Counted from the whole stretch's first letter, positions 35,989 through 42,909 are shown. The stretch is DNA of 63,608 bases, filler included, from Pelomyxa schiedti (GCA_020536535.1; 8 parts of 8 records of this genome joined end to end with filler, not necessarily neighbours in it), one strand, 5' to 3'. Notes: generated by a model not told the origin, from the sequence alone. Numbers and translations are program-made.

Positions 35989-35998
35989 GGGCATGTCT

Positions 35999-38900
35999 CT
36001 ATCTGTGGCCGTTGATGCGTTGGAGTGCACGGCGCCTGCCCTCCTCGGTGCCCAGGACGGGCTTGAGGAGCCCACGTAGCTCGCGCTTGAGTGCTCCCCG
36101 GCTGTATGGGATGTTGTTGTCTGAGCAGCACAGGTCCTGGTTCGCACAGTAGTGGAATATAAGTGCCTATGCCAATCAGTTAGTAGGGAGTGGTGCAAGT
36201 AGTGATTAGTTTTGGTTGTTCGTCGGTGTGTGGTGGGTTGAGTATGTGTCTGTGTTGATGTTGGTTGCCAATCACAGCTTGTTTGTTGGTTTTTGTTGCT
36301 TGTTTCCGGGAGGGAGATTTTAACCTGTTTCCTATCTACAAATAAAGCGGGGTGGCAGAATATGCGGGCCTGGCCGTCTGTTGTTTTCCGCCAGTAGCTT
36401 GTAAGCCTGCCGGAATACTTTATTGGGTGCCCGTATGGCTGGCATGGGTAAGCAACGCTGTCAACAGTTTCCTTGTGTATAAATATCTGGAAAAGCGAGC
36501 CTTAGGCCGGTGTGGTGTGAAATAGCTTGTTAAAACAAACCTGCAGCATATTTCCTGGTGGGTGGTCGCCTGTGGCAGCGGGATAGCCTATTACATGTCT
36601 GCCGCCAGTGCTGTAGTGCCCTGTGGGGAGGTTGTATTTGGCTCCGATTTCAACCGCCCGGTGGGCAACGTTGGCGAGGTCCCGTCCTTTGGAGAAGTTA
36701 TCCAGTGGGATGGGAATAACTTATTTGAATACCCGAAAAGCCACATGCACCCAGCAAGTCGTTGAGCAAGGTGGGCCACTGCACATCACCGCAGGAGTAT
36801 CCTTGCATGAAGCAAGAGAGCGGGTACATCTCGCTTGCCTTTGCAAAAAGCCCACAGCTCACAGAGATAGCAAGGGCACGGAACCTAGGATCGTGATCCT
36901 AAGGAACGAGTGGGTACCACTTAGGAGCGAAAACCGCACATACGTTTCCTTTCATCGACTTGAAGTCTGCCATCAACAGATCCAATGTAGGCTTTCCATG
37001 GAAAGGAGCTTGCAGTAATCTACGTTTGTGTCATCCAACAAAAAAAAAAAAGGAAGACTGGAAACCGCGGAAGTGGTGGAAAATCTGACGGTAAACCATA
37101 TAGAACGGAGGCGATTTCCGATTGCAACTCATAAAGCAAGGAAGCAAGTGAATACTAACACCAAATAAGCTCAAGAAATAAAGTCAATTCCCATACTGAA
37201 TGATAGAAGACATAGTAATCCGTGAAGTATTCCTGCTCCCGCTCCAACATCGTACTAAAGCAGTACGCACAAAATTGTGCATCCTTCGGTGGTAGGCTCG
37301 CAGTTAAGAGGTCAGCGGGATCACCCTTTAAATCATGAGTACAAACAAGAGAATTGAGGAAAAGGTACACTTAGTCCAATATATGACTGGCATGGAGCTC
37401 GCTTATTTAATCTGAAAACTACACCGTTTTTCCTTACAACAACTGGCTTCCCTGTAACTGGCTTGGTACCTGTGCTTGGGTCATAAGAGCCTCCCGTATC
37501 AACATAATCTCCCCCTCCATAGTCTCCACCATCTCCGCCTCCATAATCCCCCCCACCATAGTCTCCCCCATCTCCGCCGTCTCCTCCATCTCCACCATAA
37601 TCTCCACCATCACCCCCAGCTCCAGGAACAACATCCCCCATTAAATAGGCAACAGCTCGATTGATATCTCCACGGCTGTTTTCAACAATTATTATTCATG
37701 AAGCAGAGGTCTTGGTACCTTTCATCTAACGCAGACTTCAGTACAGAAGCTTCAGCTTTAGGGAAGATATACATCAGACGTCTTAAGTCAGGGTGAATAT
37801 CACCTGTGGGTAAAAGTTATTTCATTTTGTAAAAATTGACTTTAAACCAGGAATTACAGGTTCTGGGTCATCTTCTGGAAACAGTGTTGCGGGCCTGGCT
37901 ACCCCAAGTAGCATTGCAACTGCCTGTTCCACGTTACCATGAGCGGACTTCAAAGTTTCACTTAAAACAGCATCATCAATATGAGGTAGCATTTCCTTTA
38001 ACTGTGTTTGGGTTATATTTAGACTGGGAAAAGTGAAAGGATACCGTAAGAAGAGCAGGTGTCATTGGTCCTTTGAAAGTTGAGGTCTTTGGAAAGAAAC
38101 AAAATTAATGCTGAAAATTAAAAGGAATCCTTACAGTGGCTGGTCGTTTAGTAGGGTCAACCCCAAGACATGACGTTACATGGTGTTCCAACTTTGTTTT
38201 CTCAACAAAAAAAGGGGGAAAAGAGACATACAGCTGAAAGAGCAAAAGCTTTGTAGCAAATGGGACACATTCCTTGATCAGCGGGTTTTCCAGTACACTG
38301 GTCAACATGTTCTTGGAACTGTGGGAGTCTCAGTAGAGAATTTTCCCTAGAGGGAACTAGACCATCGAATGAGGTACACTTTGGAAACAGAATGGACAGC
38401 CATCAAAATCCTCTTCTAAAGTGGGCTTCTTAGCTGGGGCTGTGCATGTAGGAACATGGGTAAAAAGCTAGTTCCCGTTACTATGAGAGATTCTAATAAT
38501 ATGATACCTCCTCAATAGTGAAGTGCTTTCCACAAGAAGGACATTGCTCCGAAGCCGCAGAAGATGTAGTGGAAGTTGCCGGTTTTGTGCTGGGAGGGGG
38601 AGTTTTAGGCCTTGTTGTACTGGGAGGTGTTGGAGAAGGGGGTGTTTTTGGTCTGCCCGTAGTTGGTGGTGTTTTGGGCCGTGTTGTGGATGGCGTTGGT
38701 TTTGGTGAAGCATCTGCTAAACAGGCATTCACGTGATCCTCAATCTGATAGGAATCAATGCATGGATGAGAAGGGAAGGGGGATACCATTTTAATTGGGA
38801 ATTGCTTGGAGCATATTGGGCATGTTTCAGTACTAGGTGTCACAGGAGCTGAGGTGGCTGGCTTTGGTTGCACTGTTCCATCACACTTGTCAGCGTGCCT

Positions 38901-41900
38901 TGCAATCTGTAAACGATGAATATCTTTATGATTGGAGATTAAAAGTAAGACCTCTTTAAGTCCAAATGGCTGCCCACATAGAGGGCATTCAACTGTTTCT
39001 TCCGTTCTCAGATATGTAAGGGGCAAACAAAAACAAATGGCCGAATGTACCTTGGTTTTACAGGAGTAACTGGGGTTGGGGTGACTGGAGTTGGAATGGG
39101 AGTTGGCTTGACAGGAGTCACTACTGGTGTTGGTGTGACAGGAGTTGTCACTGGTGTCGGTGTTGGTGGTGTAGGTGTAGGTGTTAGTGTTGGTGTCGGT
39201 GTCGGTGTGAGAACTGGGGTGGCTACAGGCACTTGTGTTACTGGGGGAGTTGCTGCAGGTGTTGGAAGTTTTGCCATAATTGTTTGAAGGAGATCTTGTT
39301 GTTGCTTTAACAGTTCTTCCCATGTTGACTTGTTGGAGGATGCTGGAGGGGACATAGGCACTAGTGTCGCTGTTGAAAGAGGTGTGTTAACCACTGAAGT
39401 CACTGGTGTGGGTGTTGGGGGCGGTGTAGCACTAGCCACTAAAGGTGCGGTTTGAGCTGGCGTTGGTGATGGGGTGGGTGGTACTGTAGACTTTGATGTA
39501 AACAGGGAGTCAAGGAAATCAAGACTGATGGAAGAGGGTGGTTTAGTATTTCCACTTGTTGCTGGTGTTGATACAAGTGTTTCAGAAACTGGAGTAAGAG
39601 TGGCAATAGTCGATATAGTTGTTATTGGTGTTGCCGGAGTTGAAGGGGTATCAAAGGATAAATCAATTAAACTCTCAGTCATCTTGGGAGGTGGAATAGG
39701 TGTTGAAGGTGCAGTGGGAGGTGGGGAAGTTGAGGATGGTGTCATAAACGCAGACTGAGAGGATAATGCTGTAATTGATGGTATAGGTGGCTTAGCATCG
39801 ATGCCAGTTTCCTTTGCACTTGGGCAAGTTGAGGTGAGGGTGGAGGGGCCACTATGGATCTCAGAAAGAGATGGCTCAGAAGGTACCAGAGTTTGAGGTA
39901 AAGGCTGTGGTGGAGCAATAGGTTGCACTTGTGCGGGCGGGTCCATAAAAGCAGAAACAGTGGGGGAAATGATTGACATGTCCGATACTTGAGAAGTACA
40001 TAATACTGGTGTTTCTGGAATGAGTGGCATTGGCTGACTGGCTTGTGAAGTGGGAATGGGAACGCTTCCAGGAGAAGTAGAGGCAGAGGATGATGGCTGT
40101 GTTGCAATATTTGCGGGAGATTTTAGCTCTTCAGAAGGGACGATTGGGGTGAGAGCTGGTTTTTGGGTGAGAGGTGTTGGAGGTAATACCTCTGGGAGTG
40201 GCGATGCAACAGAAGAAGGAATCGATGGTTGGGTACTTACTGGTTCTGGAGAAAGAGGAAGAGGTTTTGATTCCGAACTGCTGGTCATTACTTGGCCAGG
40301 ACCATGAGCAAGAGAGGATACTATGCAGGAGGGGAAATGCGCAGCAATCTGTGATGGAATTAAATGAAATACTCATGGAACAAAGGAACACACTTCCGTG
40401 ATAGGAAACTGTAGGGCACACGAGGGACACTGCTGGGTTGAAGAGTCTGTTTTGACAGGAGGATTGGATTGATGGGTTAGTGGTGANNNNNNNNNNNNNN
40501 NNNNNNNNNNNNNNNNNNNNNNNNNNNNNNNNNNNNNNNNNNNNNNNNNNNNNNNNNNNNNNNNNNNNNNNNNNNNNNNNNNNNNNGAAATACTCATGGA
40601 ACAAAGGAACACACTTCCGTGATAGGAAACTGTAGGGCACACGAGGGACACTGCTGGGTTGAAGAGTCTGTTTTGACAGGAGGATTGGATTGATGGGTTA
40701 GTGGTGATGATGATACAGAAGTTGTGGAAGGCGCTTCATTTTGGACGGGAAATTGTGCTGGGGGTATTGGCTCTTTACAAACGACTGGAAGGGCAGGTAC
40801 TAGTGGCAGTGTAGTGGAAGCTATAATTGTTGGTGGAGCTGGAGTTGGCGTTGGAGCTGTTGGAGTTGACGTTGGCGTTGGAGTTGGAGGTGTTGATGTT
40901 GGTGTTTGCATTTGTGTTTGTGTTTGTGTGTCTGGTACTGGTGTTGGGGTTGTTGTTGGCAGCATCGTTTGTGCACTTGGTGTTGGTGTTGGTGTTGGTG
41001 TTGGTGTTGGTGTTGGTGTTGGTGTTGGTGTTGGTGTTGTTGGATTGGTCGTTTGGCATTGAACTGAACTTGCTGGGGGTTGAGTGGGTGTTGGTGTGGT
41101 TGTTGTGCCCGGTGCTGGGGTTGTTGTTGGCAGCACTGTTTGTGCACTTGGTGTGGGTGCAGCAGTTGGTGCCAATGTTGGAAGTTTTGCCATAATTGTT
41201 TGAAGGAGATNNNNNNNNNNNNNNNNNNNNNNNNNNNNNNNNNNNNNNNNNNNNNNNNNNNNNNNNNNNNNNNNNNNNNNNNNNNNNNNNNNNNNNNNNN
41301 NNNNNNNNNNACTGCTGGGTTGAAGAGTCTGTTTTGACAGGAGGATTGGATTGATGGGTTAGTGGTGATGATGATACAGAAGTTGTGGAAGGCGCTTCAT
41401 TTTGGACGGGAAATTGTGCTGGGGGTATTGGGTCTTTACAAACGACTGGAAGGGCAGGTACTAGTGGCAGTGTAGTGGAAGCTATAATTGTTGGTGGAGC
41501 TGGAGTTGGCGATGGAGCTGTTGGAGTTGACGTTGGCGTTGGAGTTGGAGGTGTTGATGTTGGTGTTTGCATTTGTGTTTGTGTTTGTGTGTCTGGTACT
41601 GGTGTTGGGGTTGTTGTTGGCAGCACTGTTTGTGCACTTGGTGTTGGTGTTGGTGTTGGTGTTGGTGTTGGTGTTGGTGTTGGTGTTGGTGTTGGTGTTG
41701 GTGTTGGTGTTGTTGGATTGGTTGTTTGGCATTGAACTGAACTTGCTGGGGGTTGAGTGGGTGTTGGTGTGGTTGTTGTGCCTGGTGCTGGGGTTGTTGT
41801 TGGCAGCACTGTTTGTGCACTTGGTGTGGGTGCAGCAGTTGGTGCCAATGTTGGATTTGTAGGTGCAGGGGGTAATTCCGGTGTTGTTAGTACTGTTGGT

Positions 41901-42482
41901 TGTTGTGTTGCCTGTGATAATAGTGGCGGTTCTGGTAATGCTGGTAATGACACTGGCATGCCAGGCGCAGTTGTCTTTGCGGTTACACATACAGACACAT
42001 GGGTGCCTATCTATTTTCCCATTAAAACTACAACAAAAATAANNNNNNNNNNNNNNNNNNNNNNNNNNNNNNNNNNNNNNNNNNNNNNNNNNNNNNNNNN
42101 NNNNNNNNNNNNNNNNNNNNNNNNNNNNNNNNNNNNNNNNNNAGTGGCGGTTCTGGTAATGCTGGTAATGACACTGGCATGCCAGGCGCAGTTGTCTTTG
42201 CGGTTACACATACAGACACATGGGTGCCTATCTATTTTCCCATTAAAACTACAACAAAAATAAATTTTCCGTTGATCAGAGCACCTTGTCAATTGCGAAA
42301 TAGGAGCCACACAACGGGCAACATTGTTGTTGTTGCGCGCCGTTGTTGTTGCCGTTGTCGTTGCTGTTGTCGCCCGGTGGTTTCGTCACAGCAACAACGC
42401 TGCGCGTGGTCGCCACGTTAGTCGTCGCAGCATCGGCGTTGCTACCCGTCGCTGGTGTCGCACCCCCCGACGCAGTGGACAT
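35999..42482 (-). CDS. large multi-exon protein: 7 UBZ4-type zinc fingers, Pro/Thr linkers, 2 CUE domains, Gly/Asp/Tyr linker, orphan C-terminal domain
   Basis: ATG 42482. Seven C-x2-C-x11-H-x3-C fingers after splicing. CUE-like LKEMLPHIDDAVLSETLKSAHGNVEQAVAMLLG and LRRLMYIFPKAEASVLKSALDESRGDINRAVAYLM. Reading frame continues across GT-AG introns to a stop at 35999-36001. The middle is disrupted by three assembly gaps. Confidence 0.85.
37476..37625 (-). repeat. coding GGD(Y)GG-type repeat
   Basis: GGDGGDYGGDGGDGGDGGDYGGGDYGGGDGGDYGGGDY between the second CUE domain and the C-terminal domain. Confidence 0.85.
40487..42142. other. three 100-N gaps (40487, 41211, 42043) with duplicated flanks inside the Pro/Thr-repeat region
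   Basis: 40587-41210 and 41311-41860 are near-identical copies that differ in (GTGTTG)n unit number. This is an unresolved or collapsed repeat, or two alleles. Confidence 0.9.
41639..41712 (-). repeat. (CAACAC)n coding Thr-Pro repeat; second copy at 40978-41038
   Basis: Perfect hexamer array encoding TPTPTP. Confidence 0.95.
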
Positions 42483-42540
42483 TGTTTTGTTTCCCTTCTT
42501 TGATTCTGAATCGGAAACTACGGTTACCGTTCACGAAGGT

Positions 42541-42556: not shown

Positions 42557-42689
42557 CAGTGTTGCGGCGACGTCGCCCACAATGATGATGGGAGCAAACA
42601 CGAAGAAATATTTGTGCAAGGCACAATTGATTATTTGACCCTATAAAAAGTGTACAAATGTTTGCCGAGTCGGGTGGCGAGGAATGTGG

Positions 42690-42909
42690 ATTGGGTTCTG
42701 AATCACGTGGTGTAATGGTGGGTGCTGGACACGTTTTTGTTGTGTGATGCTTGGTGGGTGCTGAATCACGTTGTGTTGTGATGGTGGATGCTGAATCACG
42801 TTTTTGTTGATGTGATGCAATTGGGTGCTGAATCACGTTGTGCTATGATGATGGATGCGGAATCACGTTTTGGTTGTGTAATGGCGGTGGGTGCTGAATC
42901 ACGTTGTGA
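42690..42909. repeat. minisatellite with conserved core GTGCTGAATCACGTT and alternating ~30/36-37 bp spacing
   Basis: Seven cores starting at about 42699, 42726, 42762, 42792, 42829, 42859 and 42895; runs into the contig end. Confidence 0.9.

What the first reader, a model, noticed from the sequence alone, without database searches (positions are those of the whole stretch)
35999..42482. Nine ubiquitin-binding modules fused to an orphan enzyme-like domain
Hand splicing gives 7 UBZ4 (Rad18-type) fingers, long Pro/Thr spacers, 2 CUE domains, a GGDY linker and a ~290-aa globular C-terminal domain. UBZ4 and CUE are established ubiquitin readers. I do not recognise any characterised protein with this many of both plus a terminal catalytic-looking domain. 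Inference: an avidity-driven polyubiquitin sensor that delivers an effector activity. This is the strongest candidate for an undescribed system in the window.
Basis: partly seen in the sequence, partly recalled or inferred. Interest (0 to 1): 0.82.

Follow-up and report, generated by a model that had tools for sequence, protein, structure and literature searches.

The report
Ubiquitin-reader array with orphan enzyme domain
A single spliced protist gene strings seven (possibly eight) Rad18-type ubiquitin-binding zinc fingers and two CUE domains in front of a conserved C-terminal domain that no database describes, that has a distant ADP-ribosyltransferase-like fold, and that other protists always attach to ubiquitin- or poly(ADP-ribose)-reading modules.

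Summary
On the minus strand, ATG 42482 to stop 35999-36001 gives one 1,471-aa reading frame once two false gaps are collapsed. It has seven CxxC-x11-H-x3-C fingers (0.0006 expected by chance), each split by a phase-0 intron at the same residue. Pro/Thr spacers, two CUE domains, a GGDY linker and a ~330-aa C-terminal domain follow. RNA contigs confirm 16 GT-AG introns, and one transcript contig joins fingers 5-7 (reaching back into the exon behind finger 4), both CUEs and the C-terminal domain.

Gaps 1 and 3 are unmerged exact 121-nt overlaps. Gap 2 is real and may hide a tandem copy carrying an eighth finger.

The C-terminal domain matches nothing in Pfam, NCBIfam or PDB sequences. It defines a protist-wide family (Archamoebae, kinetoplastids, dinoflagellates) always fused to CUE, UBZ, NZF, UBA, WWE, PBZ, FHA or RING modules. 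Its AlphaFold model is confident (pLDDT 93.6). The only recurring structural matches are weak hits to ADP-ribosyltransferase toxins, PARP16 and DarT. Closer predicted relatives are in Legionella (next to a SidE phosphodiesterase domain), giant viruses and a polymorphic toxin.

Best reading: a multivalent ubiquitin-targeted enzyme with an atypical ART-like core. Its activity is untested.

The parts
35999..42482 (-). Whole coding region: 20 exons after collapsing the assembly duplicates, 1,471 aa. Collapsed path: 42482-42143, 41921-41311, 40428-35999.
   Evidence: splice junctions from RNA contigs
42208..42320 (-). UBZ finger 1 (CPLCGSYFAIDK | IGTHVSVC), split by inferred intron 42232-42284
41312..42207 (-). 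Pro/Thr-rich spacer 1 (aa 75-299). Contains false gap 3 and its 121-nt duplicate (41922-42142).
40587..41210 (-). Extra contig between gaps 1 and 2. It is a 98.9% copy of 41311-41855 plus the N-half of finger 2, and ends in a KLPT|LAPT junction. It is either the boundary of a ~1.7-kb tandem duplication (an eighth finger) or an allelic or chimeric assembly product.
40325..40429 (-). UBZ finger 2 (CPSCALQFPITE | IAAHFPSC), split by inferred intron 40349-40393
38988..40324 (-). Ser/Pro/Thr-rich spacer 2 (aa 320-750). Includes the conserved short motif STWEELLKQQQDLLQTIMAKL (39254-39328), also present in the Pelomyxa paralogs.
   Evidence: RNA contigs 39077-40149
38883..38987 (-). UBZ finger 3 (CPLCGQPFGLKE | IARHADKC), RNA-confirmed intron 38907-38951
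38721..38822 (-). UBZ finger 4 (CPICSKQFPIKM | IEDHVNAC), RNA-confirmed intron 38745-38786
38444..38543 (-). UBZ finger 5 (CPSCGKHFTIEE | LFTHVPTC), intron 38468-38507
   Evidence: (piece boundary at 38508 and contig length)
38295..38398 (-). UBZ finger 6 (CPFCFQSVPHSM | FQEHVDQC), intron 38319-38362
   Evidence: (contig length)
38168..38267 (-). UBZ finger 7 (CPICYKAFALSA | LEHHVTSC), RNA-confirmed intron 38192-38231
37900..38001 (-). CUE domain 1 (LKEMLPHIDD...AVAMLLG)
   Evidence: Pfam PF02845, E 1.3e-9
37636..37801 (-). CUE domain 2 (LRRLMYIFPKAE...AVAYLMG), split by RNA-confirmed intron 37676-37718
   Evidence: Pfam PF02845, E 1.2e-3, below the cut-off. The equivalent CUE pair is found in homologs.
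37501..37626 (-). Gly/Asp/Tyr low-complexity linker (GGDY repeats). Absent from the Pelomyxa paralogs.
36002..37452 (-). Conserved orphan C-terminal domain (aa ~1133-1471; 8 exons, all 7 introns between them RNA-confirmed). Family-invariant or near-invariant residues in model numbering: FYH1202SY, D1259-H1260, F1264-R1265, S1270, E1281, G-Y-S-C1294-x-D1296, Q1362, G-Q1401-A-R1403.

Best explanation
This is one intron-rich protist gene, probably from an archamoeba close to or identical with Pelomyxa schiedti. It encodes a ~1,470-aa protein (~2,000 aa if the duplication behind gap 2 is real).

Architecture. The N-terminal two thirds are a flexible array of ubiquitin readers. There are seven (perhaps eight) Rad18-type UBZ4 fingers, two on long disordered Pro/Thr tethers and five clustered, followed by two CUE domains. 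The C-terminal ~330 aa are a folded, strongly conserved domain. It belongs to a protist-wide family that has no database description. In different lineages this domain always sits C-terminal to modules that read ubiquitin (CUE, UBZ, NZF, UBA), poly(ADP-ribose) (WWE, PBZ) or phospho-threonine (aprataxin/PNKP-type FHA), or next to a RING.

Proposed mechanism.
- The C-terminal domain is the catalytic payload (inferred from conservation and from which domains it is fused to).
- Its core is a very divergent ADP-ribosyltransferase-type fold with large helical insertions (weak but consistent structural evidence).
- Its site is atypical. A His sits on the first core strand (FYHSY), a Ser-x-Ser on the second, and Q-x-R sits where toxins carry E/Q-x-E. 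There is no conserved catalytic Glu there.
- I therefore expect it to bind NAD+ or an ADP-ribose-type ligand and to modify, or process a modification on, ubiquitin or ubiquitin/PAR-marked substrates.

The exact chemistry is not predictable from the data.
For: Gene and transcript.
- Single continuous ORF after collapsing exact 121-nt overlaps.
- 16 RNA-supported GT-AG introns, and one RNA contig spanning from the exon behind finger 4 (38706) to the 3' end.

Fingers and CUE.
- 7 fingers against 0.0006 expected.
- A profile of the orthologs' fingers hits the RAD18 UBZ best (2MRE, E 3e-6), then RAP80, WRNIP1, FAAP20 and SLX4.
- CUE1 by Pfam, E 1.3e-9.

Family.
- phmmer with one 55-aa exon found 69 cluster representatives. 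Full-domain E-values against my spliced model reach 1e-182 to 1e-40.
- Pfam confirms CUE, FHA_2, WWE, PBZ (zf-CCHH), RanBP/NZF and UBA as partner domains. A RING-type E3 and a WWE protein appear among the AFDB family hits.
- 23 invariant or near-invariant residues, many of them polar, across 56 sequences.

Fold.
- The AF2 model has pLDDT 93.6 and pTM 0.92.
- In a Foldseek-independent search of 48,161 PDB representatives, 17 of the top 50 are ART-fold proteins: ExoA, cholix, DarT, pertussis S1, PltA, ParT, TreX, scabin, DT homologs, the CNFy ART-like domain, and Agrobacterium 6b.
- AFDB relatives beyond the family are: a Legionella 'SidE PDE domain-containing protein' at residues 399-691 (E 1.7e-9, TM 0.52), a polymorphic-toxin domain, and, at non-significant E-values, a type III effector and DUF4433/DarT.
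- Giant-virus proteins match at E 2.6e-8.
Against: - No sequence method links the domain to any ART family.
- The canonical H-Y-E or R-S-E triads are not evident. My mapping of motifs to strands comes from reported alignment ranges, not from residue-level superposition, because I could not inspect coordinates.
- I could not see where the PDE domain lies in the Legionella hit. I inferred that it is N-terminal because SdeA PDE structures did not appear among the PDB matches.
- Only 2 of 7 fingers keep the Asp that I recall as important for ubiquitin contact.
- CUE2 is sub-threshold.
- No RNA covers the 5' third, so fingers 1-2 are joined to the rest only by the open reading frame.
Confidence: 0.5

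Rival explanations
1. The C-terminal domain is a thiol hydrolase, for example a new deubiquitinase or an eraser of a ubiquitin-linked modification. It would use the near-invariant Cys1294 (GYSC) with the invariant Asp1259-His1260 (DHDP). The reader array would deliver it to ubiquitin chains for trimming.
For: Cys, His and Asp are among the best-conserved residues of the family. Reader-plus-protease is a common design for deubiquitinases (established knowledge: ZUFSP/ZUP1, USP5, OTUD1).
Against: No papain-like, NlpC/P60, CE-clan or other peptidase fold appears in any structure search. My first candidate His (GGRHVIGY) is not conserved in homologs. Peptidase_C1 appears once in 56 members, at E 0.12, which is noise.
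Confidence: 0.13
2. The C-terminal domain is a non-catalytic pseudo-ART. It would be one more reader or adaptor module, for example for ADP-ribose or NAD+ or for a partner protein, and the whole protein would be a scaffold that bridges ubiquitin and PAR signals.
For: No conserved Glu sits on the strand where ARTs carry the catalytic Glu (with the ranges). Pseudo-ART domains are known (PARP13; LRRC9, PMC7955679).
Against: More than 20 invariant or near-invariant polar residues across distant protists is more than a binding surface usually needs. Distant relatives sit in bacterial effector and toxin contexts, where domains are normally enzymes.
Confidence: 0.2
3. The domain is a nuclease of the Cap4/DUF4297 (PD-(D/E)xK-like) kind, recruited to ubiquitin- or PAR-marked chromatin.
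Against: Only 80-116 residues align, mostly helices. There are far fewer such hits than ART hits. No D...(D/E)xK motif is among the invariant residues.
Confidence: 0.05
4. The reader array is partly an assembly artefact. The extra contig and the gaps would inflate or scramble the N-terminal third, and fingers 1-2 might belong to a neighbouring or paralogous gene.
For: Three gaps lie in the N-terminal third. There is a contig with a chimera-like microhomology junction. The DNA comes from single-cell amplified libraries. A high-depth DNA contig leaves the locus at 41904 into a sequence resembling this gene's 5' UTR. No RNA lies beyond about 40150.
Against: Independent Logan DNA contigs run uninterrupted from 35989 to 40428 and on through 41311-41629. 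The ORF stays open and in frame through all joins. The Pelomyxa paralogs have the same layout, including two identical fingers around the W-x-x-LLK motif.
Confidence: 0.1

Closest known systems
Pelomyxa schiedti Pelo_14432, Pelo_14436 and Pelo_14437 (hypothetical proteins, all on one 40.8-kb contig; 14436 and 14437 adjacent) and the P. schiedti protein labelled 'E3 ubiquitin-protein ligase DTX3L' (P0001)
   Same: Same architecture: 6 UBZ fingers, a W-x-x-LLK motif between two identical fingers, 2 CUE domains, and the same C-terminal domain. They are 49% (P0002, aa 870-1471) and 65% (P0001, aa 1040-1469) identical to this gene.
   Different: They have 6 fingers, not 7-8, no GGDY linker and shorter Pro/Thr tethers. 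None is characterised. The 'DTX3L' label has no support: no RING or DTC domain by Pfam, and no structural match to DTX3L in Swiss-Prot models.
SidE-family effectors of Legionella (SdeA: DUB-PDE-mART) and Lem26 (mART-PDE)
   Same: They combine a ubiquitin-directed ART with other ubiquitin-handling modules (PMC12522546, PMC12977470). A Legionella protein carrying a SidE-type PDE domain has a region (399-691) that is the closest non-family structural relative of this domain.
   Different: There is no sequence or Foldseek match to the solved SdeA mART or PDE structures, no R-S-E/ExE motif, and no PDE domain here. This is a eukaryotic host-type gene with introns, not an effector.
WWE-containing PARPs (PARP7/11/12/14) and Deltex/DTX3L-PARP9
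   Same: A reader of ADP-ribose or ubiquitin signals sits in front of an NAD+-using catalytic domain. Family members in kinetoplastids and dinoflagellates are WWE + this domain, or RING + this domain. PARP16 is among the weak structural matches.
   Different: Not detected by the Pfam PARP, ART or DTC models. The H-Y-E triad is not evident. There are ~200 extra residues of helical insertions and a C-terminal helical cap.
RAD18 / WRNIP1 / FAAP20 / SLX4 UBZ4 fingers
   Same: Identical C-x2-C-x11-H-x3-C spacing and CP-x-C start. The ortholog finger profile hits the RAD18 UBZ at E 3e-6.
   Different: Seven to eight copies in one protein, against one or two in the known proteins. Most copies lack the Asp before the last Cys (sequence). 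Single fingers score below Pfam cut-offs.
Reader-plus-enzyme proteins such as ZUFSP/ZUP1 (zinc fingers + MIU + C78 peptidase) and Cue2/N4BP2 (CUE + SMR nuclease)
   Same: The design principle is the same: several ubiquitin-binding modules deliver a C-terminal catalytic domain (established knowledge).
   Different: The catalytic domain here is unrelated to C78 peptidases or SMR. No Pfam or fold match.

Membership tests
UBZ4 (Rad18-type) zinc finger | C-x2-C-x11-H-x3-C zinc ligands with the CP-x-C start | tested here: met
   All seven fingers have it, against 0.0006 expected by shuffling.
UBZ4 (Rad18-type) zinc finger | Sequence similarity to solved UBZ4 fingers or curated models | tested here: inconclusive
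   A profile of 10 ortholog fingers hits RAD18 best (E 3e-6) and WRNIP1 at E 0.009. Two of this gene's own fingers scanned alone score below Pfam cut-offs (zf-C2HC_2 E 2e-4, zf_UBZ E 0.02).
UBZ4 (Rad18-type) zinc finger | Acidic residue two positions before the last Cys (H-x-D-x-C) used for ubiquitin contact (from my own knowledge of Rad18/WRNIP1) | tested here: inconclusive
   Present in fingers 3 (HADKC) and 6 (HVDQC). Replaced by S, P, N, P, T in fingers 1, 2, 4, 5, 7.
UBZ4 (Rad18-type) zinc finger | Binds ubiquitin | not testable with these tools
   Needs pull-down or NMR.
CUE domain (PF02845) | Match to the Pfam model above the gathering score | tested here: met
   CUE1: 37.9 bits against 21.1. 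CUE2: 18.9 bits, just below.
CUE domain (PF02845) | M/I-F/L-P motif in helix 1 and a di-leucine-type motif in helix 3 | tested here: met
   CUE1 has MLP ... MLL. CUE2 has IFP ... YLM.
ADP-ribosyltransferase (ART) superfamily | Split beta-sheet ART core fold | tested here: inconclusive
ADP-ribosyltransferase (ART) superfamily | H-Y-E or R-S-E catalytic/NAD+-binding triad | tested here: not met
   There is a conserved His on the first core strand and S-x-S on the second. The strand that aligns with E/Q-x-E carries Q-x-R, and no invariant Glu is there (ranges). The mapping is approximate.
ADP-ribosyltransferase (ART) superfamily | Sequence-profile link to a described ART family | tested here: not met
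   No Pfam, NCBIfam or PDB-sequence hit for 56 members.
ADP-ribosyltransferase (ART) superfamily | NAD+ binding and ADP-ribose transfer | not testable with these tools
   Needs biochemistry.
Deltex / DTX3L (the label carried by the Pelomyxa homolog) | RING finger plus Deltex C-terminal (DTC) domain | tested here: not met
   No RING or DTC hit by Pfam in P0001 or in the family. No DTX3L among Swiss-Prot structural matches.
Papain-like / NlpC-P60 cysteine peptidases (deubiquitinases) | Papain-like fold with a conserved Cys-His pair | tested here: not met
   No such fold in any search. The His I first paired with the Cys is not conserved. A conserved Cys and a separate Asp-His do exist.

The most novel reading that the evidence does not exclude
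The C-terminal domain founds a new eukaryotic enzyme family. It would be an ART-derived catalytic domain with a Glu-less H / S-x-S / Q-x-R site that chemically modifies ubiquitin itself or ubiquitin- or PAR-tagged substrates, for example by ADP-ribosylation or by processing ADP-ribose-ubiquitin hybrids. That would make it a host-side counterpart of the SidE and Deltex chemistries. Different protist lineages would aim it at its targets with interchangeable ubiquitin, PAR and phospho readers.
Probability: 0.2. Interest if true: 0.9.

Novelty: new variant of a known kind. Interest (0 to 1): 0.68.

Why it matters
Crosstalk between ubiquitin and ADP-ribose is currently known from a few animal enzymes (Deltex, RNF146, PARP9/DTX3L) and from Legionella SidE effectors.

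Here a well-folded, highly conserved domain without any database description is attached, across Archamoebae, kinetoplastids and dinoflagellates, only to readers of exactly these two signals. Its nearest distant relatives are in Legionella, giant viruses and bacterial toxins. That makes it a concrete, expressible candidate for new ubiquitin/ADP-ribose chemistry in free-living protists, and possibly for the eukaryotic source or target of related effector domains.

The locus is also a clean example of a reader array built by repeated duplication of a two-exon finger unit, because all seven fingers share the same intron position and phase.

If the domain turns out to be inert, the finding reduces to an unusually long ubiquitin-binding scaffold.

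Tried and rejected
1. My first guess was a papain-like NlpC/P60-type peptidase (Cys in GYSCGD, His in GGRHVIGY 50 residues later). I rejected it because that His is absent from homologs and no peptidase fold turned up.
2. Pfam on the eight C-terminal exons singly, on 10 + 10 full homologs and on all 56 domain sequences at E<=10, and NCBIfam, found nothing for the domain.
3. A profile search of PDB sequences found nothing.
4. ESM Atlas searches by features and by shape found nothing usable. Scores were <=0.60 and TM <0.3, with one ART-PolyVal row.
5. The Swiss-Prot AlphaFold library gave no match, so the 'DTX3L' label is unsupported.
6. I considered similarity to the SidE PDE domain rather than to an ART-like region of the Legionella hit. 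I judged it unlikely because solved SdeA PDE structures are not among the PDB matches. I could not see the hit's own domain map.
7. Scans of bacterial/archaeal genomes and of viral contigs for close relatives found none. The first attempt, with the 56-sequence alignment, had no usable conserved stretch.
8. Literature searches for a described CUE/WWE/PBZ-linked ART-like family found none. The LRRC9 pseudo-ART family (PMC7955679) is unrelated.
10. I could not submit the spliced protein of this window to the structure or family tools, which take references only. I therefore used the 65%-identical Pelomyxa homolog P0001:43-392 as the modelled sequence.
Full report
**Reading the locus.** All long open frames with finger, CUE and Pro/Thr content lie on the minus strand. 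The first ATG after an in-frame stop is at 42482. The frame ends at TAG 35999-36001, ten bases inside the edge of the piece.

**The gaps, tested first.**
- Gap 1 (40487-40586) is flanked by exact 121-nt direct repeats: 40366-40486 = 40587-40707.
- Gap 3 (42043-42142) is flanked by exact 121-nt direct repeats: 41922-42042 = 42143-42263. This is the signature of neighbouring contigs that share a k-mer and were scaffolded with 100 N instead of being merged. Nothing is missing there, and collapsing the repeat keeps the frame open.
- Gap 2 (41211-41310) is different. The 624-nt contig between gaps 1 and 2 copies 41311-41855 with 6 substitutions and one 12-nt (two Pro-Thr) indel. It then switches, through the microhomology TGTTGGA, into 35 nt identical to 39260-39294. 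In protein terms, '...DLLQTIMAKLPT' is joined to 'LAPTAAPTPSAQ...'.
- Independent DNA contigs from two public runs run from 35989 to 40428 and continue directly at 41311. They carry four substitutions clustered at 40084-40365.

The simplest account is two ~99% identical copies of a ~1.7-kb unit (spacer 1 end, finger 2, spacer 2) in tandem. The assembler collapsed them, and the odd contig is the copy-to-copy junction. An allelic variant or an amplification chimera is the alternative, since the DNA comes from single-cell libraries. The three Pelomyxa paralogs each have two identical fingers on either side of the same W-x-x-LLK motif, which makes a real internal duplication plausible. I put it at about 55-60%.

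**Gene model.** Single-cell RNA-seq contigs from a second sample give 14 listed GT-AG junctions. One 1,988-nt RNA contig is laid from 38706 to 35989 over 1,982 nt. That equals the 2,718-nt genomic span minus the 14 introns in that span (12 of the listed junctions plus the two I had inferred in fingers 5 and 6), so the combined length of those two is confirmed. The contig's piece boundary at 38508 also fixes the upper end of the finger-5 intron. Three more introns are inferred from GT-AG and frame only: before finger 3, in finger 2 and in finger 1. With the collapsed path the CDS is 4,416 nt with no internal stop, 1,471 aa. RNA contigs also cover 39077-40149 inside the giant spacer exon. Nothing covers the region beyond about 40150, so the link of fingers 1-2 to the rest rests on the open frame and on the paralogs' architecture.

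- Seven fingers have the pattern CP-x-C-x11-H-x3-C, at aa 55, 300, 751, 791, 870, 905 and 934. 5,000 shuffles of the protein give a mean of 0.0006 such matches.
- Every finger is split between its 12th and 13th residue, counted from the first Cys, by a phase-0 intron. This points to growth by duplication of a two-exon unit.
- Scanned alone, two spliced fingers (4 and 6) score below Pfam cut-offs. Their best families are C2HC/UBZ types.
- A profile of ten fingers from the Pelomyxa and EukProt orthologs hits the RAD18 UBZ best in the PDB (2MRE/5VF0, E 3e-6), followed by RAP80, WRNIP1, FAAP20 and SLX4.
- CUE1 is a clear Pfam CUE (E 1.3e-9). CUE2 is borderline (E 1.2e-3) but has the expected motifs. 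Several homologs have two CUE hits.
- Only fingers 3 and 6 retain the H-x-D-x-C aspartate. From memory, this residue matters for ubiquitin binding in Rad18-type fingers. How many of the nine modules are functional is therefore open.

**The C-terminal domain.** None of its exons, and none of 56 homologous domains, matches Pfam or NCBIfam. A family profile finds no PDB sequence.
- A phmmer search with the 55-aa exon 36734-36898 against 1.84 billion cluster representatives returned 69 proteins. My spliced domain matches them at up to E 1e-182.
- Sources and names place the family in Pelomyxa schiedti, a Mastigamoeba-type gene set, Bodo saltans, Neobodo designis, dinoflagellates (Symbiodinium, Effrenium, Ceratium) and many protist transcriptomes and metagenomes. 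All are 'hypothetical', apart from a few automatic labels: one Pelomyxa protein is called 'DTX3L', one UniRef entry 'WWE domain-containing protein', one 'unnamed protein product'.
- No close relative exists in one-genome-per-species bacteria and archaea, or in IMG/VR.
- The domain is always C-terminal. By Pfam it is preceded by CUE, UBZ, RanBP/NZF, UBA/GIP1_N, WWE, PBZ or aprataxin/PNKP-type FHA. In Symbiodinium it sits in a protein named RING-type E3. All of these are readers or writers of ubiquitin, poly(ADP-ribose) or damage-linked phosphorylation.

**Fold.** I could not submit this window's spliced protein, so I modelled the 65%-identical Pelomyxa domain with the 56-sequence alignment. The model has pLDDT 93.6 and pTM 0.92.
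- Foldseek finds nothing significant in the PDB. Its top rows are PltA, exotoxin A and cholera toxin A1.
- The aligned ranges (for example model 54-306 against ExoA 410-577) put the conserved FYHSY strand where ARTs carry His or Arg. They put 'AISxS' on the next core strand. They put the invariant G-Q-A-R strand where toxins carry E/Q-x-E. This mapping is my inference from ranges only.
- In AlphaFold DB clusters, after five family members, the next hits are a Legionella 'SidE PDE domain-containing protein' (residues 399-691, E 1.7e-9, TM 0.52), CPR and other bacterial unknowns, and a region of a polymorphic toxin (E 1.3e-6). A type III effector and a DUF4433/DarT protein follow only at non-significant E-values (0.17 and 0.36).
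- Two giant-virus proteins match at E 2.6e-8 and 1.8e-6.
- In all characterised Legionella proteins the SidE-type PDE is paired with an ART domain (PMC12522546, PMC12977470). This fits, but does not prove, an ART-like role for the matching region.

**Interpretation.** Shown: one gene (for at least two thirds of its length), the domain inventory, the conserved orphan family and its fusion partners, and a confident fold model. Inferred: that the array binds ubiquitin multivalently, that the C-terminal domain is catalytic, and that its core descends from the ART fold. The absence of a conserved Glu at the expected place means canonical ADP-ribosyl transfer cannot be assumed. A thiol-based hydrolase using C1294 with D1259/H1260, a pseudo-enzyme reader, or another NAD+/ADP-ribose-linked chemistry all remain possible.

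**Novelty.** The architecture itself already sits unannotated in public Pelomyxa proteins. The best-supported kinship, a divergent ART-type enzyme behind signal readers, makes it a new variant of a known design, not something without precedent.

Noticed in passing
window 42672-42908: Upstream of the gene's 5' end there are about six imperfect direct repeats, spaced 30-37 nt apart (one step of 63), each containing TGGGTGCTGAATCACGTT (families D4 and D8). They run to the edge of the piece. They could be a promoter-proximal or satellite-like array.
   Followed up: no
window 41789-41904: Short DNA contigs at about 5-fold (X1) and 2.4-fold (X2) the depth of the main contig (84-94 against 17-35) match 41789-41904. 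They then leave the locus into a sequence that resembles this gene's own 5' UTR (42491-42514, 20 of 24 matching). This suggests another paralog or haplotype in which the Pro/Thr region directly follows a similar leader, without finger 1.
   Followed up: partly
L001 583-5593 and 5796-10966 (Pelomyxa schiedti JAHLWZ010000937.1): Two paralogs with the same architecture (1,217 and 1,270 aa, 93% identical) lie head-to-tail 200 nt apart. A third (Pelo_14432, 1,300 aa) is on the same 40.8-kb contig. This is a recently expanded tandem gene family.
   Followed up: partly
window 39254-39328: A short conserved, probably helical motif (S-x-W-x-x-[IL]-L-K-x-Q-x-x-x-L-x-x-[IL]-M-A) is embedded in the disordered spacer. 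All three Pelomyxa paralogs have it between their two identical fingers. It might be a further interaction motif.
   Followed up: no
window 36451-39858: RNA contigs from the second sample differ from the window at about 15 positions and carry a 12-nt in-frame insertion (GGTGTCGGTGTC) behind 39191, in the Pro/Thr-coding repeat. The DNA contigs agree with the window there. This is strain or cell polymorphism, including length variation of the PT repeats.
   Followed up: no
window 37020-37065: This RNA-confirmed intron contains a T13 run. DNA contigs from both DNA runs have loose ends at 37033 and 37053-37055, so assemblies break or branch at this homopolymer.
   Followed up: no
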